Below, piece by piece: positions 11,009 through 62,507 of a stretch of DNA of 63,936 nucleotides. The stretch lies in contig NC_069006.1 of NCBI RefSeq assembly GCF_001194135.2, positions 25,409,096 through 25,473,031 on the forward strand, read 5' to 3'. Both the position numbers and the translations under genes were made by a program. Numbering within the stretch: position 1 is the first letter of the stretch; every line of letters starts with the position of its first letter. This stretch comes from Octopus bimaculoides (lineage: Eukaryota). A model generated the notes under the pieces. That model was given only the letters and a program-made list of their open reading frames with translations. It had not been told where the DNA came from and did not search any database.

Positions 11009-11057
<49 letters not shown>

Positions 11058-11092
11058 TTGTATTTGTGGGTGTGCGTATTTATTTATATATA

Positions 11093-11146
<54 letters not shown>

Positions 11147-11855
11147 TTCTGGTGCTTATCTCCTTCACTTCATTTATATCTCTCACTTCACCTTCAATAC
11201 AATTCTTGTACAAATTCTGTGATTTTCTCGTAGCTGTAACATATCCATGTTTTCTTTTTTTCCTTCTCACTTTTCTGTTGCAACACATCTCTCAGTTTGT
11301 TAATATAATTTCTTACTTACCTATCTGCTCACCCACCTACCCACCAACCTACCCACCTGTTTCTATCCATCCATCCATTCACCCACCCATCCTACCGATA
11401 TGTTTGTAGTCTTATTTTCTCTCCCTACATGTTTTCTCTATCTGACTGCTCCGTTAAACAACTCCTTCTCCATCATTCCTCCATCAATAAAACTATTTTC
11501 CTTGCTTTATACATGTTTGTCTCACTGAGTAAATATTAATCTTATCGTCCTATCTATTCTCCATCCATGTCCTACATCAAATGGCCCTCCATGGATCTCG
11601 CATGTCCCTCACTCACACCCTCTCTCATACATATTTTACACACACACACACACTAATAGACACATGCTTACATGCATATATACACACACGTGTGTGCATG
11701 CATATGTATACTCACACACACACACACACATAAAAACACACATGTATACATCTATGCACAGGCACATACACATGCACACATATATATACATACAGACACA
11801 CACATATATATATATATATACACAGACACACACACACACACATATATATATATAG

Positions 11856-12014
11856 GATGGGCTTCTTTCAGTTTCCATCTACCAAATCCACTCACAAGGC
11901 TTTGGTCGGGTCCGAGGCTATAGTAGAAGTCACTTGCCCAAGGTGCCATGCAGTGGGACTGAACCTGGAACCATGTGGTTGAGAAGCCCTTTACCACCCA
12001 GCCACTCCTGTGCC
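11856..12014 (-). mobile_element. SINE family A, 5' half
   Basis: Reverse complement of tRNA-like head (tggctgggtggtaa…ggttcagtcccactgc) plus ccttgggcaagt. Confidence 0.9.
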
Positions 12015-12644
12015 TGTCATCACCATTCTCTATCTCCCCCCACCCCGTTTCATCAACCTCATCCTCCAGCACTGCCATCTCTGCTCCATTCACACCTCTC
12101 TCCTTATTTTATACTCTCCCTTCTCCTCCCTTCCATTCCTCCCACCCCTCTCTCATGTTTCTTCATGTTTCTCTCTACATTCTCTCCCCCCACCACCCCT
12201 TTATTTTCTCATGGCTTCCATTCCCCACCCTCCCACTGGACACAACCTCTCCACAGTTTAATACATCTCTTCTTTCTTTCTTTCTTTCTTTCTTCCCCTC
12301 TTTAATTTACAAATTTGTAAATCTAATCTCGGTCTTTCAACCATGAAACAATTGATGAAAAATCAATCACACACAAACACATGTGCACACATGCAGTCAT
12401 GCACATACAAACATGTGTGTGCACACATGCACATACACGAACACGCAGACACAGACACACACACACGAACACGCAGACACACACATGCCTATGTACACAG
12501 AGACGCACACACTTCCCATCGCCATCATTGTCATGGTTTCCATCTTCACTCGGATCAGACAAACTTCATTCGGCCAGATGCTTCTCCTCTTGCTCCAACC
12601 CTGTTTCCAAGCAAGATAATATTTCCCTTCTTCTCCAAGTTGTG

Positions 12645-13601: not shown

Positions 13602-14043
13602 TGGGCTGTGTGGTAAGTAGCTTGCTTTCCAGCCACATGATTCCAGGTTCAGTCCCACTGCATGGCACCTTGGGCAAGTGTCTTCTACTATAGCCTCAGG
13701 CCTACAAAAGCCTTGTGAGTGGATTTGGCAGACGGAATCTGTAAGAATCCTGTTGCGTGTGTGTGTGTGTTTGTATATATGAATATATGTATTGATATAT
13801 GTACATGTATGTGTGTGTAAGTATATCTTTGTGTCTGTATTTGTCCCCCACCACCACTCGACAACTGGTGTTGGTGTGTTTACATCCCCATAACTTGGCA
13901 GTTCAGCAAAATAGACTGATAAAGCAAGCGCCAGGCTTAAAAAACAAATAAGAACTGGCACTGATTCATTCGCCTGAAAATTCTTCAATGCAGTGCTCCA
14001 GCATGACCACTGTCTAATGCCAAAAACAAGTAAAAAATAAAAG
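13602..14043 (+). mobile_element. SINE family A, full length with internal (TG/TA) microsatellite
   Basis: A-box-like ggctgtgtggtaag, B-box-like ggttcagtcc, ccttgggcaagt, internal microsatellite, tail gtgctccagcatg…aaacaagtaaaa. A head fragment also lies at 13441-13522. Confidence 0.9.
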
Positions 14044-14354
14044 ATATATACACACATATACATAAAGCTGTATAATACACACATACATACACAAAATACA
14101 TATGTATATANNNNNNNNNNNNNNNNNNNNNNNNNNNNNNNNNNNNNNNNNNNNNNNNNNNNNNNNNNNNNNNNNNNNNNNNNNNNNNNNNNNNNNNNNN
14201 NNNNNNNNNNNNNNNNNNNNNNNNNNNNNNNNNNNNNNNNNNNNNNNNNNNNNNNNNNNNNNNNNNNNNNNNNNNNNNNNNNNNNNNNNNNNNNNNNNNN
14301 NNNNNNNNNNNNNNNNNNNNNNNNNNNNNNNNNNNNNNNNNNNNNNNNNNNNNN

Positions 14355-14697
14355 GGTTCAGTCCCACTGCGTGGCATCTTGGGCAAGTGTCTTCTACTAT
14401 AGCCTCGGGCCGACCAAAGCCTTGTGAGTGGATTTGGTAGATGGAAACTGAAAGAAGCCCATCGTATATATGTATGTGTGTGTGTGTTTGTGTGTCTGTG
14501 TTTGTCCCCCCAACATCGCTTGACAACCGATGCTGGTGTGTTTACGTCCCCGTAACTTAGCGGTTTGGCAAACGAGATCGATAGAATAAGTACTAGGCTT
14601 ACAAAGAATAAGTCCTGGGGTCGATTTGCTTGACTAAAGGCGGTGCTCCAGCATGGCCGCAGTCAAATGACTGAAACCAGTAAAAAAAGAGTAAAAG
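14355..14697 (+). mobile_element. SINE family A, near-consensus (5' cut by gap)
   Basis: Least diverged copy in the window; CpGs retained. Confidence 0.92.
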
Positions 14698-16108: not shown

Positions 16109-16502
16109 TCTTTACTCTTTTATTTGTTTCAGTCATTTGACTGCGGCCATGCTGGAGCACGGCCTGTAGTCAAACAAACCGACCCCAGGACTTATTCTCT
16201 GTAATCTTAGTACTTATTCTATTGGCCTCTATTGCCGAACCACTAAGTTACAGGGACATAAACACACCAACATTGGTTGTCAAGCAATGGTGGGGGGGAC
16301 AAACACAGACACACAAATACATACATACAAACAAACACACATATATATATGTATATATATGTATGAGGGGCTTCTCTCAGTTTCCATCTAACAAATCCAT
16401 TCATAAGGCTTTGACTGGCCTAAGACTATAGCAGAAGACACTTGCCCAAGATGCCACACAGTGGGACCGAACCTGGAACCATGTGGTTGGGAAGCAAGCT
16501 TC
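16107..16502 (-). mobile_element. SINE family A, full length
   Basis: Complete reverse complement of the head-to-tail consensus. Confidence 0.92.
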
Positions 16503-16544
16503 TTGTGTGTGTGTGTGTACTGGGGTGGCCAAGTATCTCCTATC

Positions 16545-16838
16545 ATAGTAAGACACCTATCTCTGTCGCTCTGTTATACTCTCACCTGGCTCACAGCCAC
16601 CCACCTCGTTTCCACTCCCTCTCTCACCTGAGAGATCTTTGTCTTGCAAGGTACTTGGTAACTCCACTGGTGCCACATAAAAAGCACACAGTCTACTCCT
16701 TAAATTGGTTGGCATTAGGAAAGGCATCCAGCCATACAAATGGAACCTGGTGCAGCTCTCCAGCCTTGCCATCCTCTGGTGAAACCATGCCACCCATGCC
16801 AGCATGGAAAATGAACGTTAAATGATGATGACGATGAT
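16545..16838 (+). mobile_element. Family D
   Basis: ggaaaggcatccagcc…ccagcatggaaaatgaacgttaaatgatgatg. Confidence 0.8.
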
Positions 16839-23197: not shown

Positions 23198-25085
23198 TTG
23201 CCTGTGTACTTCAATACAAAGATTGTTAAATATATTTATATACATGCACACACACATATACATACATGCATCCATATACGTACACACACATTTACACACA
23301 CACATATATAAATACAAACAGACATAAGCATAGATATATATATCTATATCTATATAGATATAGATATAGATATAGACACATTCAAACATATACACCTATA
23401 TACACATACAGACATAGNNNNNNNNNNTGTACTTCAATACAAAGATTGTTAAATATATTTATATACATGCACACACACACATATACATACATGCATCCAT
23501 ATACGTACACACACATTCACACACACACATATATAAATACAAACAGACATAAGCATAGATATCTATATCTATATCTATATAGATATAGATATAGATATAG
23601 ACACATTCAAACATATACACCTATATACACATACAGACATAGGCATATATATATATATACACATATATATATATATATACACACACACACCCCTATACCC
23701 ACTCTCCGCCCCCACAGAGCTATGTATGCTGAAGATGGTATGGTAAGGACAAGAGTAGGAAGAACTGGATGTTAAAGTCTTGCTGTAATAATTTGTAAAA
23801 CAGACACATCAGCTGGAGGAGACATAATTATAACCACCACCACCACCACCGCTGCTGCTACTACTACCACTACTACTACTACTTGCTCACCACCAGTCTC
23901 CACCACCACCACTCACTGGCATAGTCTCTGTTAACAAAGATACCATCATGTTTAACAGACAACGCTATCAGCAGCACCACCACCGCCGCCACCATCGCTA
24001 CTACCACTGCCACAACCACCACCACCATCACCAGTCATCATCATTATCGGTCTCATCACTGCCACCATTACCTCCCTCGTCTCCCCTGCTACCAACGTCG
24101 TCATCATCATCATCATCATCATCATTGCTATCATCATCATCATCATTGCTATCATCATCATCATCATCATCGTCCTTATCATCCATCTCACCACCACCAC
24201 CACCATTATCAACATCTCCAACACCATCATCATAATCATCAGTTTCCCCACCACCGCCATCACAAATTCCACTACCACCACTATCATCGTTATCATCATC
24301 ATCATCATCACCACCATCGTCGTCATCATCATTATCATTGTCATCACCACCACCACTACCGCCCTTACTGTCACCCCCACCAACATCCGTATTGTTGACT
24401 GTACCATCATGTTTAACAGACGACACCACCACCACCACCACCACCGTCTCCATCTCCATTATCATTATAATTATTATTTCTGTCATTACACTAATAATTA
24501 TCTGATGCACACATTATCAGGGCTTGAAGAAGAACTGCCATCATCTTTGCCATCAGCAGCAGCCATACCACCACTACCACCACCGGCATCGTCGCCACCA
24601 TCACTGTGACCACTACCACCACCTTCCTCCTCCTCCTCATGATCACAACCACCATCATTAAGATCAGCACAATTATTACCACCACCACCAGCAGCATCAC
24701 TGCCATCACTGTGACCACTACCACCNNNNNNNNNNNNNNNNNNNNNNNNNNNNNNNNNNNNNNNNNNNNNNNNNNNNNNNNNNNNNNNNNNNNNNNNNNN
24801 NNNNNNNNNNNNNNNNNNNNNNNNNNNNNNNNNNNNNNNNNNNNNNNNNNNNNNNNNNNNNNNNNNNNNNNNNNNNNNNNNNNNNNNNNNNNNNNNNNNN
24901 NNNNNNNNNNNNNNNNNNNNNNNNNNNNNNNNNNNNNNNNNNNNNNNNNNNNNNNNNNNNNNNNNNNNNNNNNNNNNNNNNNNNNNNNNNNNNNNNNNNN
25001 NNNNNNNNNNNNNNNNNNNNNNNNNNNNNNNNNNNNNNCCAGCCAACATCACTTATCTTGCTATCTGACCACCACCACCACCACC

Positions 25086-28510: not shown

Positions 28511-29489
28511 TGAAGTGCTGAAATAATGAAGATCTTTTTAAAACGAGATTACTCGTTCCATACCACCACCACCACTCCACCCTCCTACGCCACCGATTCC
28601 AATAAAAGGTCACCCATCTGGAAACGTGTTATCTTTGATGGAAGATTCNNNNNNNNNNNNNNNNNNNNNNNNNNNNNNNNNNNNNNNNNNNNNNNNNNNN
28701 NNNNNNNNNNNNNNNNNNNNNNNNNNNNNNNNNNNNNNNNNNNNNNNNNNNNNNNNNNNNNNNNNNNNNNNNNNNNNNNNNNNNNNNNNNNNNNNNNNNN
28801 NNNNNNNNNNNNNNNNNNNNNNNNNNNNNNNNNNNNNNNNNNNNNNNNNNNNNNNNNNNNNNNNNNNNNNNNNNNNNNNNNNNNNNNNNNNNNNNNNNNN
28901 NNNNNNNNNNNNNNNNNNNNNNNNNNNNNNNNNNNNNNNNNNNNNNNNNNNNNNNNNNNNNNNNNNNNNNNNNNNNNNNNNNNNNNNNNNNNNNNNNNNN
29001 NNNNNNNNNNNNNNNNNNNNNNNNNNNNNNNNNNNNNNNNNNNNNNNNNNNNNNNNNNNNNNNNNNNNNNNNNNNNNNNNNNNNNNNNNNNNNNNNNNNN
29101 NNNNNNNNNNNNNNNNNNNNNNNNNNNNNNNNNNNNNNNNNNNNNNNNNTTGTGGTTATTCTGAAGAATTCCTTTTGCTTGGCAAATTTTAAGAAAGTCT
29201 ATTTATTATTTCTGCTATATGGCTTCAATAACCACTCGATTCTTTCGAGGTTTCCCTCCCCCAGACCCACCACCACCACCACCACCACCCGCCTGCACAT
29301 CTCTCTTCTCAAGAAACAATGCTTGTTTTTGTTTTTTGTCTGTTGGATAGACATGAAATACAGATGTCGAATGGAGAGACAGACACTGTGGAAATGGCGA
29401 TTGCGAACATACATTAATGTGTGTGTGTGTGTGTGTACATACACACATATATATATATATGCGCACACATATTTAGTATGTAGGTGTCT

Positions 29490-35150: not shown

Positions 35151-35256
35151 TACTCTTACTCTTTTACACTTTTACTTGTTTCAGTCATTTCACTGCGGCC
35201 ATGCTGGAGCACCACCTTTAGTCGAGCAAATCGACTGTGGGACTTATTCTATCGGT
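35151..35256 (-). mobile_element. SINE family A, 3' tail
   Basis: cttgtttcagtcattt…ccatgctggagcaccacctttagtcgagc. Confidence 0.85.
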
Positions 35257-35324
35257 ATCATAAGGATTTCAAGGTCCAACTCTACAAAAGAATTAGGTGA
35301 TACGGTTGACATAATAACTCACTG

Positions 35325-35455
35325 GTTCTGTATTTTAACGAACCCTGGAAAGATAGAAAACAAGACTGACCTCTGGCAGGATTTGAACTCGGAACATAAA
35401 CAGCCTGAAAGAATTCTGCAAAGTATTTTCTCCAAAGCTGTCATGATTCTACTGA
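35325..35455 (-). mobile_element. SINE family B, diverged
   Basis: gacctctggcaggatttgaactcggaac. Confidence 0.55.
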
Positions 35456-35559
35456 CATCCTTTCTTTATATAAAATATTAAATAATATCTTTCGTTTCAG
35501 AAAAAAAACACATTAAAGACTGCCATGTGTACGATAAATGTCATAATCCACATATCGCA

Positions 35560-36658: not shown

Positions 36659-37039
36659 ATTATTGTTATTATTATTATAGTTAAGGCAGAATCCTGTTTA
36701 TATTAACCCTGCACAAAACACAATACAACAATATTACTAGCTGTTTCGTAACATCCTGCATAATTAATAAACTCAATATATTGAATAACCAAATGGCCTT
36801 TACATAATACAATGATCTTTAAAACTAGTTTATCATAACATCCGCCCTCTTCCATCGCACACCTGTCACCCCCTGTTCCAGTACCCACATTAACCCACTG
36901 GGGTACTGCAGTGTTCAGGGTGTTAAAGTATTGAGAGAAATGGTTAATTAGTTGTGGGATTGACTTAGCTTTTTAATTGAGTGGTAATAGCTTTTAATGT
37001 AATAAACGAATTAAAAATATATTTTCAGTTAACGAAACA

Positions 37040-37245
37040 ATGGAAGACTGCGCCTGCATCTGGGGCAGTGCTGCTGTTGTTACAGTTGCACCCATCACTG
37101 CTGCTTCCCCCACCTCCATCACCACTTTTATCACTGCTGGCGCTGCTGCTCTCGCAGTCACCACTGTTGCTGTGCATATTGACATCCTGGACTGCATCCA
37201 GAAAAGGGCCACTTGACTGATTAACATTCAGTCACTAACGAATAG
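37040..37245 (+). mobile_element. CR1/L2-group LINE relic (post-RT region)
   Basis: MEDCACIWGSA…ILDCIQKRAT*LIN, cf. MEYCSHIWG…LDRIQKRAxRLI. Confidence 0.6.
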
Positions 37246-37350
37246 AATTTGCTGTAAACAATTGAAACATTAATAAATAAAAATAGCCATCTATGTATCA
37301 TACCTAATGTATAAAAACAAACTAGCACTTTGTCAGTTATGAAGAGTGCT

Positions 37351-37545
37351 AGTACTCAGCCACATGTATGTTAATTTCTTGAGCAGGTTGTTCCATTGAT
37401 CAACCTGCTCAAGAAATTAACATACATGTGGCTGAGTACTCCACAGACATGTATACCCTTAATGTAGTTCTCAGGGTGATTCAGCATGGCACACCAAATG
37501 TGACAAGGTTGGCCCCCTTGAAACACAGATACTATTCATTCTTTC
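37351..37545 (-). mobile_element. Family G repeat carrying an inverted duplication
   Basis: ctgagtactccacagacat…gtagttctcaggg…ttcagc is the reverse complement of 55860-56020. Confidence 0.75.
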
Positions 37546-38175: not shown

Positions 38176-38457
38176 GTGTGGGTGTGTGGTAAGATGTTTG
38201 GTTCTCAACTACATGGTTCTAGGTTCAGTCCCACAGTGTGGCACCTTGGGCTACCCACAGCCTGGTCAGTGGATTTGATAATGGAAACTGAAAGAGGCCC
38301 ATCCTTTATATATATATATAGGCGCAGATATGTCTGTGAGGTAAGAAGCTTACTTCCCAACCACATGATTCTAGGTTCAGTCCCACTGCGTGGCACCTTG
38401 AGCAAGTGTCTTCTACTATAACCCCAGGCCAACCAAAGCTTTGTCAGTGGATTTGGT
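38176..38457 (+). mobile_element. Two SINE family A 5' halves in tandem (38176-38305, 38336-38457)
   Basis: Two ggttcagtcccac…ggcaccttg heads. Confidence 0.85.
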
Positions 38458-39155
38458 ATATATATAAACTTTAGTTTTTGAATGGTATTTACTTTATTGA
38501 AGCACACGAGAAAATTCAATCTCTAATATTCAACAAAATAAATCTGTAGATTTTATCTGGCTCCACCTCAGTAAATTTAAATACACCGGACAATCGTAAA
38601 CAAAGGTAACCGATCTAATTTCACCAGTGGACAAAAAAAAAAAAATACGGGGATCGGCCGGATTATAATTTCAGTGATTCTTAAGATCTCATCAGTAACT
38701 GCTAGAGATATATATTTTTTTTCTCCTTTATCAATTAACCAAGAGAGCGACTAAAGTATATTTCGCTCAGGTGTGATTATTGAGACGGTAGAAAGAGTAA
38801 ACGATTGCCAATAAAGTGAAATATATCAACAGCTTGTTGTAGTAGGATTTTTTTTCGTTAAGTATTTTAATCGGAAGTCAATGTTGTTACAGCCACCATC
38901 TTTGATTACAACAGCGCAACTGTCTAACGTCTTGGCTTCGTGGAATTCAAACGCTTTTGTTAAGTGTTTGTACTCGTTCATCCACAAGGCAGACTTCGTT
39001 CGTGACACAGACTTCGACGCTGGAGGCGGTTTATAGATTGTATTTATTCCTAGGTGTGTTTGGGGGTTGCTCGGCAACAACTATTTGTAAACTACCGTTG
39101 TAAAGGAGGAAAGAGGAAAATGTGAAGAGTAATGTGGTGTGAAAGAGAGACAGAG

Positions 39156-40916: not shown

Positions 40917-42899
40917 CCATGAGTTCAATAATAATGGTTAATTTACTAAGTTCTTCATTATCTTCAAAATCAATTGAAAGAAAGGCAGGGTGATACAATT
41001 GTGATACGATAAAGGAAAGGCTAATAGGCAGATAACTAAACTGAGANNNNNNNNNNNNNNNNNNNNNNNNNNNNNNNNNNNNNNNNNNNNNNNNNNNNNN
41101 NNNNNNNNNNNNNNNNNNNNNNNNNNNNNNNNNNNNNNNNNNNNNNNNNNNNNNNNNNNNNNNNNNNNNNNNNNNNNNNNNNNNNNNNNNNNNNNNNNNN
41201 NNNNNNNNNNNNNNNNNNNNNNNNNNNNNNNNNNNNNNNNNNNNNNNNNNNNNNNNNNNNNNNNNNNNNNNNNNNNNNNNNNNNNNNNNNNNNNNNNNNN
41301 NNNNNNNNNNNNNNNNNNNNNNNNNNNNNNNNNNNNNNNNNNNNNNNNNNNNNNNNNNNNNNNNNNNNNNNNNNNNNNNNNNNNNNNNNNNNNNNNNNNN
41401 NNNNNNNNNNNNNNNNNNNNNNNNNNNNNNNNNNNNNNNNNNNNNNNNNNNNNNNNNNNNNNNNNNNNNNNNNNNNNNNNNNNNNNNNNNNNNNNNNNNN
41501 NNNNNNNNNNNNNNNNNNNNNNNNNNNNNNNNNNNNNNNNNNNNNNNNNNNNNNNNNNNNNNNNNNNNNNNNNNNNNNNNNNNNNNNNNNNNNNNNNNNN
41601 NNNNNNNNNNNNNNNNNNNNNNNNNTCTTTTCCTCTTTCCCCTATTTTGTTGCCAAAAATTTCCATAACTTCACCGTCTTTCACCTTTTTTTCCCCTGAA
41701 TTTTCTGGTTTTCATTTTTACCGAATTCTTATGTTTGAAGCATCGACATTAAAATTCTGAAAAGAGGGAGGTGGGGGGAAAATAATAAATAAATCCTTTT
41801 CTTGTCTTTCGTTCCTGATTTTTTTTTCTTTTACTTCACATTTTTATCCTGCAAATTTTTACCAAAATAATAATAATAATAAAAATAATGATGATGATGA
41901 TGATGATGATAATAATAATAATCAAAGAAATATATATTCAATAATTAATCATTAGCGACAGATGCAGTATAAATACCAAGTGGTAATCTTTATATCCAAC
42001 TTAACGTGGATGTCATGTTAGAACACCAAGTACTGCGTTGTGAGCTGTAAGAGATCCTCTCATATAAGTGCTTGATGCATAAAAGCGCACACATAGATCG
42101 TAGTGGATGAAATTTGTTTGTCACGGGGACCAGAATTCCTATATCATGTCATTTCGGTCTATTGGACTTCATCAGTGGAAAGCACCGATCACCGCATGCC
42201 AATCAAATCTTGCCGTCATGACGCATAGAATATCACACCTACTAAACTGTATTAGTTATGCGTAACCATCGCCCCCAAAGCGATGTCACCTCTTTTAGCG
42301 TACATTTATATATACATATATATGCATGTATGTATATATGTTAGGAGTGGATATTATATGTTCGATATTGCTTTTATATTAACTATTAATGCGTTGATAT
42401 GAGAAAGTAACACACACACACATCCCCTCTCTCTCTCTCTCTCTCTTTCTTTCTCTCTTTCTTTCTCTCTCTCACACGCATTTCGGAATTTATTCTAGTT
42501 TGGTGCAACTTTGTTAAAATTGATTTTATTTCTTAGTTTTGGTTTTTGAATCTAAATTCTTAGTCATTCTTTTGAACTCAATCAAAGACTGCACAGTCAC
42601 ACACGCATCTGCAATATTATACAAGCACATACATACAGACAGTAAGAAACACACATATACATACGAACAGAGGCAAACACGCACTCAAACACATGGACAC
42701 ACATATACATACACATATAGACGTATATATATATATATATATATGTATAATATTGCATGTGTGTGTGTATAAATATATGCGAGGCTAAGTCTGTAACATA
42801 TATTGCATAAATCTGTTCGTGTAGATTCGGTAAATTGCTGGGAGGATAAAGAAGGGGGGAACTCAAAATATGGAGGGGGAAAAATGAGAGGAAGATAAC

Positions 42900-43954: not shown

Positions 43955-44090
43955 TATGTGGTAAGAAGTTTATTTCCCAATCACTTGGTCCCAGGTTCAG
44001 TCCTACTGCGTGGCACCTTGGGCAAGTGTCTTCTACTAGAGCCTTGGGCTGACTGAAACCTTTAGTAGAAGGAAACTAAAGGAAATCGTT
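43955..44090 (+). mobile_element. SINE family A, 5' half
   Basis: ggttcagtcctactgcgtggcaccttgggcaagtg. Confidence 0.85.
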
Positions 44091-44376
44091 CGTGTGTATG
44101 TGTATATATATATATAGAGAGAGAGAGGGGTGAGACTGAGATAGATATGGATATATATATATATATATATATANNNNNNNNNNNNNNNNNNNNNNNNNNN
44201 NNNNNNNNNNNNNNNNNNNNNNNNNNNNNNNNNNNNNNNNNNNNNNNNNNNNNNNNNNNNNNNNNNNNNNNNNNNNNNNNNNNNNNNNNNNNNNNNNNNN
44301 NNNNNNNNNNNNNNNNNNNNNNNNNNNNNNNNNNNNNNNNNNNNNNNNNNNNNNNNNNNNNNNNNNNNNNNNNNNN

Positions 44377-44431
<55 letters not shown>

Positions 44432-44454
44432 ATATTTATGTATATATTGTTTAG

Positions 44455-44822
44455 ATAAGAAGCTTGCTTCCCAACCACATAGTTCCGGGTTCAGTCCCAC
44501 TGAGTGGCACCTTGGGCAAGTGTCTTCTACTATAGCCCCAAGCTCACCAAACACTTGCAAGTGTATTTGGTAAACAGAAACTGAAAGAAGCCCATCATGT
44601 ATGTGTGTATATGTGTTGTGTAACGTGGTGTGTTTGTGTTTGTCGCCCACCACAGCTTGATAACCGGTGTTGGTGTGTTTATGTCCCCGAAAGCTAGCAG
44701 TTCAACAAAGGATACCGATAGAATAAATACTAGGTCCGATTCATTCAATTAAAAAATTCTTCAAGATGGTGCCCCAGCATGGCCTGCAATCTAACGACAG
44801 AAACAAGTACAAGATGAAAGCT
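44455..44822 (+). mobile_element. SINE family A, full length
   Basis: Head-to-tail consensus match. Confidence 0.9.
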
Positions 44823-52110: not shown

Positions 52111-52872
52111 TGTAACCCTATTGCATAGTTTTTTACATATTGCACTCAAAACGGTTAAAAGAACAGTTCTAAAATGTTTATTAAGAGAAGGAAATGAAGG
52201 AGATTTCTTTAGTATCGCATTGCATTTCATTTTCATTCAAATTCTAAATCGGTTACATTTTATTTTCCTTCCCATCATCTACACCATCCTTTCTCCAAAA
52301 TATCATCTGCTCTTCCACCATTTTTTTTCTTCTCTTCTTCCCTTTCTCCTTCTTGAACTAATTATGCTCCAAAGATGATGCTGTCACTACGATCTCATTA
52401 CTTCCATGTGGTGTTAAATAAATATTTATGTTGGTCACAAGTGAATATCTTGTGATATTTCAGTGTTTTCTCTCAAATCCTCCTTCTCTATGCCAATTCA
52501 TAATAAAGCACAGATGCTGTTATATTTTGTGTAAATCTCTCTGAAAAACAGCCAGTTTTACAGAAAGTCATTATCTTTATTAGGTATGCCTCACCCATCT
52601 TGTAAAAACATTTTATATTACTTTACCGAAGAACTTAACCCATCAACTTGAAATTGCAATGGCGAACCTCTCTAGCAGTGGAAACAAAATATTTTTTTTA
52701 ATATTAGTTTGACATTTACAGTGTTTTCATATTTATTTCAAATAAAAATTGAAACAATTTAATGACAAGCCTGATTTAGCTGTCATACACAACACAGGCC
52801 ATAAGCCATAACAGGCACCAGAGCTGCGCTCGGTAGTGCAGTGAAAGCATGTGACAAGAATAAGACGACTGA

Positions 52873-55645: not shown

Positions 55646-55859
55646 TATTATTGTTGATGTTGTCACTAAATGCTTGGTAAATCTATTGACTGATGTTCTT
55701 TTACTGAATTTCTTGTTATATCAGATCGCCCACCTCCACCCCGCCGCAGAGAGTGAATTAAAACGGCAGAAAATTTTGGAGGAAAACAAGTAAATGTGTT
55801 AGGTTGCATCTCCTGCCATCCCTGCTGATTAATTTTAGTAGCTGTTGGGGGCCTGGCGG

Positions 55860-56020
55860 TGGTGGTGTCACATTCTGTGTCACGCTGAATCTCCCTGAGA
55901 ACTACATAAAGAGTATGCATGTCTGTGGAGTACTCAGCCACTTGCACCATTAATTTCATGCGCAGGCTGTTCTGTTGAATGGATCAACTGGAACCTGGGT
56001 CGTCGTAACCGACTGAAGGC
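55860..56020 (+). mobile_element. Family G repeat
   Basis: gtcacattctgtgtcacgctgaatctccctgagaactac…gagtactcagccacttgc. Confidence 0.7.
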
Positions 56021-56858
56021 TACTTTCACATCTATGTATGTGTAATATGATTAAACTTTTCCTGTTTTTTTTTTAGCATCAATCTCTAATCAAAACTAAA
56101 TTAGCCTTAAATAAGCTGCAAACGAGAAACAGATATTTTTCTTTCCGCTTGCCTCTTTACAATTTATTCGTCAAAGAGAAAACGGTGGAGATGCAGAGCT
56201 GAAACAGTTCGTTTACGTTAACATATCTCGTTACACAAAACAACAGCCAGTAATTTAAAACAAAAAGTGTTTCTCTTACAATGTCTATATTTTATTACTA
56301 CAACAAAACTCGAAGTCTCAGGGGTCTTTCACCAGGAAAGAATACGCCATCTTTATTTCGACTTCCTTTTGATGGTGGTGACGACGAGGGCGGACTTGCT
56401 TTATTTGTATATTTAAATACAATCTGTTTAGCTTAGCAAGATCAACAGTGACGATGAACACAATATATAAACATTATATTGATTGCTATTTGAAGTGTAA
56501 CACCCTGTCATTGCTTCTAGTTTACCGTCGCCGCCATTACGACGCTGTTCCTCTGATATTTGTATCACCATTCTACATAAACATCGCATGCTGCTCTCAG
56601 TGTGTGTCGGTGTTGTTAGTTGATACAGGGGGATTTTAGTTAGATTCTTTCTTTACTTCTCTTATTATTTCACTTTATTTTATGGTATTTTTCTGCTTTT
56701 TTTTTCTGTAGTCGGAATCAAAAGAAACTTTTATCTTCTGCCCCTCTTTTACTCGAACAAACCTTTTTTCTTCCTCTCTCGACAAAAGAAGGAAAAGAAT
56801 AACATGGTTTCACTTTCTAGATCAGTTCCTTTCTATAAATATTCTCCTTAATCCCCCT

Positions 56859-60274: not shown

Positions 60275-60975
60275 AAGATGGCGAGCTGGCAGAAAACGTT
60301 AGCACGCAACCGGGCGAAATGCTTAGCGATATTTCGTCTGCCTTTAAGTTCTGAGTTCAAATTCTGCTGAGGTCGACTTTGCCTTTCATTCTTCTGGGGT
60401 CGAAAAATTAAGTACCAGTTGCGTACTAGGGTTGATCTAATTGACTGCCCCCCCCCCCACAAAAAAAAAACAATTTTGGGCATTGTGCCTAGAGTAGAAA
60501 AGAATATATACAAGGGAGTAAGGGAGTGCTGAAAAGTGTGCGTGTGTGTGAAAGCACCTTCTTGGAGTGGTTGATGTTAGGAAGGGTATCCAGCTGTAGA
60601 AACCATGCCACAACAGACTGGGGTCTGGGGCAGCCTCCCCCAACCCAGCTTGCCAGCTGTGGTCAAACCATCTGACCCCTGCAAGCGTGGACAACGGACG
60701 TTAAATGATGATGATGATGATGATGGTGTGTGCGCGTATGTATGTATGTGTTTATGCCTGTGTTTTGTACCTCGCCACCCGCTTGACAACCAGTGTTGGT
60801 GTGTTTATGTACACATAACTTAGCAGTTTAGCAGGAAGGAACTGATAGAATAAGTATGAGGCCTAAAAACAAAAAAAATGAAAATCAAATAAGTACCCAG
60901 GCCAATTCTTCAAGGCGGTGTGGTGCTCCAGCATGGCCACGATCTAATGCCTGAAACAAGTAACAGATAAAACAT
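60275..60975 (+). mobile_element. SINE cluster: B full (60275-60505), D (60515-60725), A 3' half (60745-60975)
   Basis: Each matches its family motifs. Confidence 0.88.
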
Positions 60976-61965
60976 AGAAAGATATATACACTAACATGCA
61001 CACATACGTGCTTGCATACGTACATACATAAGTATATATATATATTTATATACATACTTATACACATATATATTTATATATATATATGTTTATACATACA
61101 TACATATATATACATATACATATACATACATACAAAAGTGTATNNNNNNNNNNNNNNNNNNNNNNNNNNNNNNNNNNNNNNNNNNNNNNNNNNNNNNNNN
61201 NNNNNNNNNNNNNNNNNNNNNNNNNNNNNNNNNNNNNNNNNNNNNNNNNNNNNNNNNNNNNNNNNNNNNNNNNNNNNNNNNNNNNNNNNNNNNNNNNNNN
61301 NNNNNNNNNNNNNNNNNNNNNNNNNNNNNNNNNNNNNNNNNNNNNNNNNNNNNNNNNNNNNNNNNNNNNNNNNNNNNNNNNNNNNNNNNNNNNNNNNNNN
61401 NNNNNNNNNNNNNNNNNNNNNNNNNNNNNNNNNNNNNNNNNNNNNNNNNNNNNNNNNNNNNNNNNNNNNNNNNNNNNNNNNNNNNNNNNNNNNNNNNNNN
61501 NNNNNNNNNNNNNNNNNNNNNNNNNNNNNNNNNNNNNNNNNNNNNNNNNNNNNNNNNNNNNNNNNNNNNNNNNNNNNNNNNNNNNNNNNNNNNNNNNNNN
61601 NNNNNNNNNNNNNNNNNNNNNNNNNNNNNNNNNNNNNNNNNNNNNNNNNNNNNNNNNNNNNNNNNNNNNNNNNNNNNNNNNNNNNNNNNNNNNNNNNNNN
61701 NNNNNNNNNNNNNNNNNNNNNNNNNNNNNNNNNNNNNNNNNNNNNNNNNNNNNNNNNNNNNNNNNNNNNNNNNNNNNNNNNNNNNNNNNNNNNNNNNNNN
61801 NNNNNNNNNNNNNNNNNNNNNNNNNNNNNNNNNNNNNNNNNNNNNNNNNNNNNNNNNNNNNNNNNNNNNNNNNNNNNNNNNNNNNNNNNNNNNNNNNNNN
61901 NNNNNNNNNNNNNNNNNNNNNNNNNNNNNNNNNNNNNNNNNNNNNNNNNNNNNNNNNNNNNNNNN

Positions 61966-62078
61966 GTCTTCCTGGGCCTACCTCTTCCACAGGTTCCCTC
62001 AACTGTTAGGGTGTGGCACTTTTTCACGCAGCTATCCTCATCCATTCTCACCACATGTCCATACCAGCGCAATCACAT
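61966..62078 (-). mobile_element. RTE-clade LINE fragment, well preserved
   Basis: RLRWYGHVVRMDEDSCVKKCHTLTVEGTCGRGRPRK, the classic RTE RWxGHVxRM…GRGRP motif; runs into a gap. Confidence 0.9.
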
Positions 62079-62198
62079 GATCATTCATGACCAAAGGGGG
62101 TCCTTACCCTTTACCCTTTTTGTATCATGGAACCAGGGGTGGTTCAAGGATGAGAGGAGGAGAGGAAGAATGGAAAATTAAAAATTAAAAACACTGAC

Positions 62199-62507
62199 CT
62201 CATTTCTCAGTTCTTCCTCGAGACCCAGTTCAAAACCGATATCACTGTCCTCAACTTGACTCTCTGACAGCTCTGATTGTGAAACCGTCACTTGTTCCTG
62301 TTGGATGACATCTGATAATATGTCGTTCATGTCGTTCACCATCATGGTCACCATGTCCAGCATCGAAGACAAGACGCCGACACTGCTGTAGTTGTTGCGG
62401 CAGTCTTCCTCCAGTTCATGTTCATTAAGTCTTTGGAGTTGACTTACAAAGTTTCCCACCAGGTCTTGCAGATGGCACGATCTTTCATGCACCGAGCCTG
62501 AAAACAT
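62199..62507 (-). CDS. Coding exon of an unidentified protein (acidic, predicted helical/coiled-coil)
   Basis: Non-repetitive 103-codon reading frame MFSGSVHERSCHLQDLVGNFVSQLQRLNEHELEEDC...ELGLEEELRNE ends at a strong phase-0 donor GAG|gtcagt (62199/62198). Upstream acceptors: ttttgtcttttaatatcag (exon from 62558, ATG at 62507 in accATG context), ccacag (62524) or ttttcag (62497). No family recognised. Confidence 0.65.

What the first reader, a model, noticed from the sequence alone, without database searches (positions are those of the whole stretch)
37351..37440. Perfect 40-bp-stem, 10-nt-loop hairpin created by inverted duplication inside a SINE
Seen: 37351-37390 is the exact reverse complement of 37401-37440 (40/40), with loop ttccattgat. 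Both arms carry the same differences from the family-G copy at 55860-56020 (acatgtatg vs acttgcacc; cttgagcaggttg vs catgcgcaggctg). Inference: the palindrome arose after this copy diverged, e.g. by template switching, or has been homogenised. At 90 nt it is pre-miRNA/endo-siRNA sized. Established: coleoids have very high ADAR A-to-I editing of dsRNA, and TE-derived hairpins are a known route to new small-RNA loci.
Basis: partly seen in the sequence, partly recalled or inferred. Interest (0 to 1): 0.7.

Follow-up and report, generated by a model that had tools for sequence, protein, structure and literature searches.

The report
Template-switch hairpin in an octopus repeat
A perfect 40-bp hairpin in an Octopus bimaculoides interspersed repeat is real in the assembly and most likely arose when DNA copying folded back at the repeat's small native hairpin and inserted a 33-nt inverted copy; this kind of mutation is known, and nothing here shows the hairpin has a function.

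Summary
37351-37390 is the exact reverse complement of 37401-37440, with a 10-nt loop. It is the only long perfect inverted repeat in the window that is not simple sequence, and about 1e-17 are expected by chance.

The window is Octopus bimaculoides. The repeat copy is not truncated at the palindrome: it continues on both sides. Removing 33-36 nt (37348/37351-37383) restores colinearity with the only other copy (55836-56040, opposite orientation). What remains is a native 7-bp stem-loop, CAGGTTG-TTCCATTGAT-CAACCTG, and the other copy has a short hairpin at the same spot.

So the outer left arm is a templated insertion, the reverse complement of 37408-37440. It extended a 7-bp stem to 40 bp. 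This is the "stem extension" class of template-switch mutation described in primates and in rRNA. The arms show 0/33 differences, against 17% divergence between the two copies (P≈0.002), so the event is younger than the copies' split.

Function is unsupported. There is no Rfam family match, and published surveys find no endo-siRNA pathway in molluscs. Transcription, small RNAs and editing could not be tested here. An assembly artefact is unlikely but not excluded. This is an ordinary, tidy example of a known mechanism.

The parts
37299..37347 (.). Left part of the repeat copy, lying beyond the palindrome. It is homologous to the other copy's sequence 5' of its native hairpin (55992-56040, reverse complement).
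   Evidence: Colinear match of 19/30 at a 3-nt offset; 4 of 36,529 genomic controls do as well. In a gap-tolerant extension test the true flank adds +13 or +16 to the score; 0.6% or 0.15% of 4000 random flanks do as well. Alignment.
37348..37350 (.). Three bases (GCT) between the repeat's left part and the templated insertion. They are not templated by the right arm. They could be filler or an ordinary indel.
   Evidence: Removing 36 nt (37348-37383) gives the best, gapless junction with the other copy: score 167, against 164 for removing 33 nt. Not resolved.
37351..37383 (.). Templated insertion forming the outer 33 nt of the left arm. It is the exact reverse complement of 37408-37440.
   Evidence: Exact match. 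It is absent from the other copy, and removing it restores colinearity.
37384..37390 (.). Native left half-stem, CAGGTTG.
   Evidence: Matches CAGGTT in the other copy at the homologous position. The sequence with the insertion removed still folds into this 7-bp hairpin.
37391..37400 (.). Apical loop TTCCATTGAT, which is native repeat sequence (compare GATCCATT in the other copy).
37401..37407 (.). Native right half-stem, CAACCTG.
   Evidence: Aligns to CAGCCTG in the other copy; fold.
37408..37440 (.). Source (template) of the inverted copy. It is the outer 33 nt of the right arm and is contiguous with the repeat body.
37441..37534 (.). Rest of the repeat copy. The core is 82.7% identical to the other copy.
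55836..56040 (.). The only other copy of the family in the window, in the opposite orientation. It has no 33-nt inversion. It carries a short native hairpin (GTTGA/TCAAC, flanked by CAGG...CCTG) at the homologous site. It has 6 CpGs, against 0 in the hairpin copy.
41834..41851 (-). Last coding exon (DKNVK, stop) of LOC106871850 isoform X5, with a tttgcag acceptor. It is the nearest mapped transcribed feature on the minus strand, about 4.4 kb upstream of the hairpin in the gene's direction.

Best explanation
The palindrome is a genuine genomic feature made by one short template-switch mutation inside an old copy of an interspersed repeat of about 200 nt. The repeat family has a small native stem-loop at this site. 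In this copy it is CAGGTTG-TTCCATTGAT-CAACCTG. During DNA synthesis (replication or repair) the growing strand either folded back on this 7-bp stem or jumped briefly to the opposite strand. It copied the 33 nt next to the stem in reverse (source 37408-37440) and then returned to its original template. The result was a 33-nt inverted insertion (37351-37383, perhaps with 3 extra bases) that lengthened the stem from 7 to 40 perfect base pairs in one step. Shown: the exact symmetry about the native hairpin, the continuation of the repeat on both sides, the absence of the 33 nt from the paralogous copy, and the youth of the arms relative to the split between the two copies. Inferred: the polymerase mechanism itself, and that the event happened at this locus and not in a source element. 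On function, the most likely state is none. If a long minus-strand transcript of LOC106871850 or any read-through transcript covers the site, the RNA would form a 40-bp perfect duplex. That would probably be a routine ADAR substrate and not a small-RNA gene.
For: The palindrome is exact, unique in the window and impossible by chance. The repeat continues to the left of the palindrome (about 1e-4, 0.0015-0.006). Deleting 37351-37383 or 37348-37383 raises the alignment score to the other copy from 151 to 164 or 167 and makes it colinear through the junction. With the 33 nt removed the sequence still folds into the 7-bp native hairpin, and the other copy has a 5-bp hairpin at the homologous spot. 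The arms differ at 0 of 33 positions although the two copies differ at 17.3%, so P(0) is 0.0019 if the arms were as old as the split. The host copy has lost all 6 CpGs that the other copy keeps, which suggests it is old. The mechanism and this exact outcome are described in the literature: a stem extended by a template-switch mutation has source and target on different stem halves with one half gaining an insertion, and existing hairpins may trigger intra-strand switches (bioRxiv 10.1101/2021.04.15.439925 = PMC8794818; PMC5453318; PMC10710096).
Against: The stand-in for the ancestral state is a paralogous copy only 83% identical, not an orthologous locus. The insertion boundaries (33 or 36 nt) and the polarity therefore rest on one comparison. 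An unconstrained local alignment of the left flank alone is not significant (276 of 2000 shuffles do as well), and the parameters of the constrained test were chosen after I had seen the match. The outer junction shows no clear microhomology, and 3 bases (GCT) are unexplained. I could examine no reads and no independent assembly. The v2 chromosome assembly reuses the same shotgun contigs (PMC9068888). I could not count other family copies, so the event could have occurred in a source element.
Confidence: 0.7

Rival explanations
1. Assembly or library artefact. The genome has only the native 7-bp hairpin, and the 33-nt inverted segment came from chimeric snap-back reads or a mis-traversal of the assembly graph.
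For: The window comes from a gapped short-read shotgun assembly with 11 N runs. The v2 assembly is the same contigs re-scaffolded (L001 is identical). I could not reach any independent sequence of the locus. Six exact-ORF look-ups around it found nothing.
Against: No gap lies within 3.6 kb. The inversion is short and returns precisely to the correct flank, so an artefact would need two chimeric junctions carried into the consensus. Graph fold-backs usually run on along the reverse strand and do not return after 33 nt (own knowledge). The event is anchored on a native hairpin, as expected for a biological template switch.
Confidence: 0.1
2. Inherited subfamily feature. The template switch or some other inversion happened in a source element, and this locus is one of many copies that were born with the long hairpin.
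For: Only two family copies could be examined. Part of the 17% divergence between them could reflect subfamily differences.
Against: The host copy looks old, with 0 CpG against 6 in the other copy and a diverged head, yet the arms are identical. A hairpin as old as the insertion should have picked up mismatches. The only other copy lacks the insertion.
Confidence: 0.1
3. A functional small-RNA locus. Whatever its origin, the hairpin is now processed by Drosha and Dicer-1 into a young, species-specific miRNA. The endo-siRNA version of this idea is less likely still.
For: The stem (40 bp) and loop (10 nt) are close to the pri-miRNA preference of about 35 bp with a loop of 10 nt or more (PMC10710096). 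Template-switch hairpins have given rise to real miRNA genes in primates and rodents. The octopus miRNA annotation excluded species-specific candidates by design (PMC9699675).
Against: No Rfam family reaches its gathering score, and the sub-threshold hits are generic, to unrelated families and on both strands. In primates only 18 of more than 6,000 suitable template-switch hairpins are miRNA genes. No promoter or host transcript has been shown to cover the site. Perfect, bulge-free 40-bp stems are atypical of established miRNAs (own knowledge). Molluscs lack DICER2 and siAGO and show no endo-siRNA signature.
Confidence: 0.03
4. An inversion made during retrotransposition (twin priming or cDNA snap-back). 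On this view the element is 5'-truncated at the hairpin and the left arm was made at insertion.
For: Before the left flank was analysed, homology to the other copy appeared to stop at the palindrome.
Against: The element's sequence continues on the far side of the palindrome, colinear with the other copy. So there is no truncation, and the inverted piece is an insertion within the element.
Confidence: 0.03
5. Two independent events: a fragment of a second family copy inserted head-to-head.
For: Repeats are dense in this genome (PMC9068888).
Against: The inverted piece carries all of this copy's private differences. It starts exactly where the native stem ends, so the helix is continuous. That register would not be expected from an unrelated insertion.
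Confidence: 0.02

Closest known systems
Template-switch mutations (TSMs), 'stem extension' class, under the four-point model (Löytynoja & Goldman 2017, PMC5453318; Mönttinen & Löytynoja 2022, PMC8794818)
   Same: A reverse-complement copy of adjacent sequence is written in one event. Source and target sit on opposite halves of the same stem at equal distance from the loop. One half gains an insertion. A pre-existing hairpin nucleates the switch. The stem is perfect at birth.
   Different: Published cases were inferred from orthologous parent-child comparisons in primates, rodents and rRNA trees. Here the ancestral state is inferred from one paralogous repeat copy in a cephalopod. My search of the held library found no paper combining template switch, inverted repeat and octopus.
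De novo miRNA genes generated by TSMs (Mönttinen, Frilander & Löytynoja 2023, PMC10710096)
   Same: The way the hairpin arose, and its geometry, are near pri-miRNA dimensions. The hairpin lies near or inside a transposable element and possibly inside a host gene's transcription unit.
   Different: Those loci have small-RNA read evidence and miRBase entries. This one has no evidence of expression or processing. More than 99% of such hairpins in primates are not miRNA genes.
Correction of quasi-palindromes to perfect palindromes (Ripley 1982, as cited in PMC5453318 and PMC10710096)
   Same: Intra- or inter-strand template switching at an inverted repeat.
   Different: The classic model turns an existing near-perfect repeat into a perfect one. 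Here only 7 bp existed beforehand and 33 nt of new inverted sequence were added.
ADAR-edited dsRNA from inverted repeats (Alu pairs in primates; repeat-derived dsRNA in octopus, PMC5625713)
   Same: A transcript covering the site would form a long perfect duplex in a repeat-rich, heavily editing species.
   Different: Typical substrates are pairs of separate inverted repeat copies hundreds of bp long. This is a 40-bp fold-back within one element, and I could not check editing.
LINE-mediated twin-priming 5' inversions (Ostertag & Kazazian 2001; own knowledge)
   Same: An inverted segment inside a retroposon-like repeat.
   Different: Twin priming gives a 5'-truncated element with an inverted 5' piece. 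Here the element is intact on both sides and the inverted piece is an internal duplication.

Membership tests
Template-switch mutation, stem-extension class | An inverted fragment of 15 nt or more that is an exact reverse complement of nearby sequence | tested here: met
   33 nt (37351-37383) is the reverse complement of 37408-37440, 33/33. The threshold is from PMC10710096.
Template-switch mutation, stem-extension class | Source and target on different halves of the same stem, at equal distance from the loop | tested here: met
   Both directly abut the native 7-bp stem, CAGGTTG/CAACCTG.
Template-switch mutation, stem-extension class | One stem half has gained an insertion relative to the ancestral sequence | tested here: met
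   Compared with the paralogous copy, removing 33-36 nt restores colinearity (score 151 to 164 or 167), and the left flank is homologous. Caveat: the outgroup is a paralogue, not an orthologue.
Template-switch mutation, stem-extension class | Parent-child comparison at the orthologous locus shows a single-step change | not testable with these tools
   I could not reach any other octopus genome or any reads.
Animal miRNA gene | Match to a curated miRNA family | tested here: not met
   No Rfam hit reaches its gathering score. Sub-threshold hits of 15-45 bits, against cut-offs of 48-142, go to unrelated plant and animal miRNA models on both strands.
Animal miRNA gene | Hairpin with a stem of about 35 bp and an apical loop of 10 nt or more | tested here: inconclusive
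   The stem is 40 bp and perfect, and the loop is 10 nt. That is close to the preferred size but longer, and it has no bulges.
Animal miRNA gene | Two discrete arms of about 22-nt reads with 2-nt 3' overhangs and uniform 5' ends | not testable with these tools
   No small-RNA read data were available. The held supplements of PMC9699675 contain no precursor sequences.
Animal miRNA gene | Lies within a transcribed region or has a promoter | tested here: inconclusive
   The hairpin is about 4.4 kb beyond the last mapped LOC106871850 exon on the minus strand. The last exons of isoforms X2-X4 are not in the window and could lie beyond the hairpin.
Endo-siRNA hairpin (hpRNA) locus | The organism has a dedicated siRNA pathway (Dicer-2 and siAGO) | not testable with these tools
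   Published surveys report it absent in Mollusca, and O. bimaculoides libraries show no siRNA signature (PMC11114477, PMC12479628).
Endo-siRNA hairpin (hpRNA) locus | A long inverted repeat (hundreds of bp) that yields phased siRNAs | tested here: not met
   The stem is 40 bp and does not extend.
ADAR hyper-editing substrate | A stable, long, near-perfect RNA duplex | tested here: met
   -75.8 and -77.2 kcal/mol, 40 perfect base pairs, 24 adenosines in the stem on either strand.
ADAR hyper-editing substrate | Clustered A-to-G mismatches in RNA-seq | not testable with these tools
   No RNA-seq data were available.
tRNA-derived SINE | A tRNA-like head with pol III A and B boxes | tested here: not met
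   ARAGORN finds nothing. Rfam in permissive mode finds no tRNA hit in either copy. The only hint is a resemblance, by eye, of TAGCCTTCAGTCGGTTA to a tRNA D-arm.
tRNA-derived SINE | Many dispersed copies with a 3' tail and target-site duplications | tested here: inconclusive
   Two copies in about 72 kb. I recognised no tail or duplication. Scans of public contig collections found no further copies.
Twin-priming 5' inversion | A 5'-truncated element whose 5' segment is inverted | tested here: not met
   Element sequence is present and colinear on the far side of the inverted piece.

The most novel reading that the evidence does not exclude
The hairpin is a very young, O. bimaculoides-specific miRNA gene, or a regulated ADAR/Dicer-1 substrate, born in a single template-switch step inside a repeat and expressed from a long isoform of LOC106871850. 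That would be the first documented de novo small-RNA gene of this origin in a cephalopod, a lineage known for miRNA expansion and heavy RNA editing.
Probability: 0.03. Interest if true: 0.6.

Novelty: new member of a known kind. Interest (0 to 1): 0.25.

Why it matters
This is a clean, single-locus example outside vertebrates of how a template switch can turn a 7-bp native hairpin in a repeat into a 40-bp perfect stem in one step. Octopus genomes are packed with SINE-like repeats, edit dsRNA heavily and have expanded their miRNA repertoire. A genome-wide census of such events could therefore show how much of the raw material for editing substrates and new miRNAs comes from this mechanism. This one locus, without expression data, does not change what is known.

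Tried and rejected
(1) Exact-sequence look-ups of six window ORFs spanning or flanking the hairpin, to find an independent assembly: none is on record. P0003 (isoform X1) is also not on record.

(2) A protein search with concatenated stop-free translations of the repeat core, to collect more family copies: 0 hits. The search with the coding-looking block at 37025-37225 also gave 0 hits, so that block is not a known exon.

(3) Scans of public contig collections for the invariant repeat core: metagenome contigs twice and prokaryotic genome contigs once, all 0 hits. No octopus genome is reachable with these tools.

(4) L001, from the v2 chromosome assembly, covers only LOC106871850 plus 10 kb on each side. 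It does not reach the hairpin, is built from the same contigs, and adds no new family copy.

(5) Searching the octopus miRNA paper's supplements for the arm sequence was uninformative. The held files are k-mer tables, not precursor sequences.

(6) Twin priming or 5' truncation was my first reading. I dropped it once the left-flank homology was shown.

(7) The unconstrained local alignment of the left flank alone was not significant. Only the colinear, anchored tests are.

(8) I looked for microhomology at the outer junction. AGTGCT|AGTACT and a GTG/CAC pairing are suggestive, but neither predicts the observed junction, so I make no claim.

(9) I read the pri-miRNA motifs (UG, UGU, CNNC) by eye. 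They are too short to mean anything on one sequence and I did not use them.

Full report
1. OBSERVATION. Bases 37351-37390 are the exact reverse complement of 37401-37440 (40/40), separated by TTCCATTGAT. The match cannot be extended by a single base outward or inward. Every other perfect inverted repeat of 24 bp or more in the window is TA or TATAGA simple sequence. From the window's base composition, about 1.3e-17 such repeats are expected by chance. The transcript of either strand would fold into an uninterrupted 40-bp helix, at -75.8 or -77.2 kcal/mol with z about -14. As single-stranded DNA the energy is -49.9 kcal/mol. The window has 11 runs of N, but the nearest are 28649-29149 and 41047-41625.

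2. SOURCE AND CONTEXT. The ORF at 62178-62507(-) is exon 1 of Octopus bimaculoides LOC106871850, an uncharacterised protein of 108-127 aa with several isoforms. Its alternative last exons map on the minus strand at 60888-60950, 52523-52540 and 41834-41848. The last of these has a clean tttgcag acceptor. The last exons of isoforms X2-X4 are not in the window. The hairpin therefore lies about 4.4 kb beyond the last mapped exon on the gene's strand. It could be intronic in the longer isoforms, but that is not shown. The coding-looking, GC-rich block at 37025-37225 has no protein homologue.

3. ANATOMY. The window, plus 8.5 kb of extra sequence in L001, holds only two copies of the repeat. One contains the hairpin. 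The other is at 55836-56040 in the opposite orientation. Their core is 82.7% identical.

At first the homology seems to stop at the palindrome, which would suggest a truncated element with an inverted end. It does not stop there. The 30 nt to the left of the palindrome (CAAACTAGCACTTTGTCAGTTATGAAGAGT) match the other copy's sequence just 5' of its own short hairpin (GAAAGTAGCCTTCAGTCGGTTACGACGACC). The match is 19/30 and colinear with a 3-nt offset, and only 4 of 36,529 genomic control segments do as well. In a gap-tolerant test, joining the true left flank directly to 37384 raises the alignment score from 151 to 164, or to 167 if 36 nt are removed. Only 0.6% or 0.15% of 4000 random genomic flanks give as large a gain. 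With the 33 nt left in place the flank adds nothing. An unconstrained local alignment of the flank alone is not significant, so this conclusion depends on colinearity with the anchored core.

Between the two homologous flanks, this copy reads CAGGTTG-TTCCATTGAT-CAACCTG and the other copy reads CAGGTT-ccagtt-GATCCATT-CAAC-agaacag-CCTG. Both fold into a short hairpin at this spot: 7 bp here once the insertion is removed, and 5 bp (GTTGA/TCAAC) in the other copy.

So the inner 7 bp of each arm and the loop are native repeat sequence. The outer 33 nt of the right arm (37408-37440) are native repeat body. The outer 33 nt of the left arm (37351-37383) are an insertion that is the exact reverse complement of that body. 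Three bases (GCT, 37348-37350) remain unassigned.

4. MECHANISM. This is the signature of a short template-switch mutation. A growing DNA strand that has just copied the native stem-loop folds back on the 7-bp stem, or jumps to the opposite strand. It copies the adjacent 33 nt in reverse and then returns to its template. The same 7-bp repeat can serve as the homology for the first switch if synthesis runs leftward, or for the return if it runs rightward, so the direction cannot be decided. [quoted passage not shown] It also proposes that existing hairpins trigger intra-strand switches (PMC8794818 and its bioRxiv version). The steps shown here are the symmetry, the insertion and the native hairpin. 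The polymerase events are inferred.

5. TIMING. The 33-nt template differs from the other copy at 6 positions plus one gap, yet the two arms are identical. If the arms had been diverging for as long as the two copies (p-distance 0.173), 5.7 mismatches would be expected, and the probability of seeing none is 0.0019. The 95% upper bound on divergence between the arms is about half the divergence between the copies. The host copy has no CpG where the other keeps six, consistent with an old, decayed copy. The alternative, that the event happened in a source element and is shared by a subfamily, could not be tested because I could reach no further copies.

6. ARTEFACT? I could not examine reads. 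The v2 chromosome assembly only re-scaffolds the same shotgun contigs (PMC9068888; L001 is identical where it overlaps). Three things argue against an artefact: no scaffold gap is nearby, two precise chimeric junctions would be needed for a 33-nt excursion that returns to the right flank, and the event is anchored on a native hairpin. A HiFi assembly from another individual exists (PRJNA1076263, PMC10925132) and would settle the matter.

7. FUNCTION. Nothing I could test supports a function. No Rfam family is matched at its gathering score anywhere in the window. The permissive scan gives 15-45-bit hits to a mix of unrelated plant and animal miRNA models on both strands, all far below their cut-offs, as any long perfect hairpin would. 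The dimensions are close to the pri-miRNA preference of about 35 bp with a loop of 10 nt or more (PMC10710096). However, the same paper reports more than 6,000 suitable template-switch hairpins in primates against 18 miRNA genes, so the prior is well under 1% before any expression evidence. The octopus miRNA catalogue required presence in two octopus species, so a young locus would have been excluded by design (PMC9699675). Its absence from that catalogue is therefore uninformative, and the held supplements contain no precursor sequences in any case. The endo-siRNA suggestion is weakened by two surveys that find no DICER2, no siAGO and no endo-siRNA signature in molluscs, one of which used O. 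bimaculoides libraries (PMC11114477, PMC12479628). ADAR editing is the most plausible fate if the site is transcribed. Octopus shows exceptionally high hyper-editing, concentrated in repeat-derived near-perfect dsRNA (PMC5625713). That would make this an ordinary substrate.

8. COMPARISON AND VERDICT. By mechanism the feature meets the testable criteria of the stem-extension class of template-switch mutation, with the caveat that the outgroup is a paralogue. It fails the one testable miRNA-family criterion, and it fails the criteria for an hpRNA locus and for a twin-priming inversion. The SINE label is unverified: ARAGORN and Rfam see no tRNA-like head, and I found no tail or target-site duplication. 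My search of the held library found no paper combining template switch, inverted repeat and octopus. The case may therefore be new for cephalopods, but it is a new member of a well-described kind.

Confidence that this is a real template-switch stem extension with no demonstrated function: about 0.7. Artefact: about 0.1. Subfamily feature: about 0.1. Functional small-RNA gene: about 0.03. Interest: 0.25.

Noticed in passing
window 60888-60950 (-); compare 35176-35481 (+) and 13985-14386 (-): The last coding exon of LOC106871850 isoform X1/XP_014774053.2 (ALDRGHAGAPHRLEELAWVLI) looks repeat-derived. Similar GHAGAP/GHAGAL peptides occur in unrelated ORFs elsewhere in the window, which suggests a repeat has been exonised as an alternative 3' exon.
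   Followed up: no
window 38205-38519, 16442-16825, 11934-12305, 13985-14386, 44036-44653: A different and much more abundant repeat family recurs across the window. It shows up as ORFs containing MPKMPRSGTEPGTMWLGSKLL-like peptides and is probably one of the dominant octopus SINEs.
   Followed up: no
window 61966-62072 (-), next to the gap at 61144-61965: The ORF fragment MRWYGHVVRMDEDSCVKK...GRGRPRK resembles the conserved C-terminal motif of invertebrate LINE reverse transcriptases (own knowledge). It is probably a LINE remnant cut by the assembly gap, just downstream of LOC106871850 exon 1.
   Followed up: no
window 37025-37225: A GC-rich block of GCT/GCA-type repeats, 130 nt from the hairpin, is open in several frames on both strands and looks like a Ser/Gly-rich terminal exon. 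It has no homologue among 5.8 billion proteins.
   Followed up: partly
window 37348-37350: Three bases (GCT) lie between the repeat's left part and the templated insertion. Neither the right arm nor the other copy explains them. They may be untemplated filler at the switch point or an unrelated indel.
   Followed up: partly
window 41834-41851 (-), 52523-52540 (-): The 2015 RefSeq isoforms of LOC106871850 use alternative last exons spread over more than 20 kb. The current annotation on the v2 assembly keeps one 1.6-kb isoform. The last exons of isoforms X2, X3 and X4 are not found anywhere in the window.
   Followed up: partly
window 23339-23593 and 11015-11147: Microsatellite-based inverted repeats ((TATAGA)n facing (TCTATA)n 185 nt apart, and TA-rich palindromes) are the only other long perfect inverted repeats. 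One of the window's 11 N gaps lies beside the first (23418-23427).
   Followed up: no
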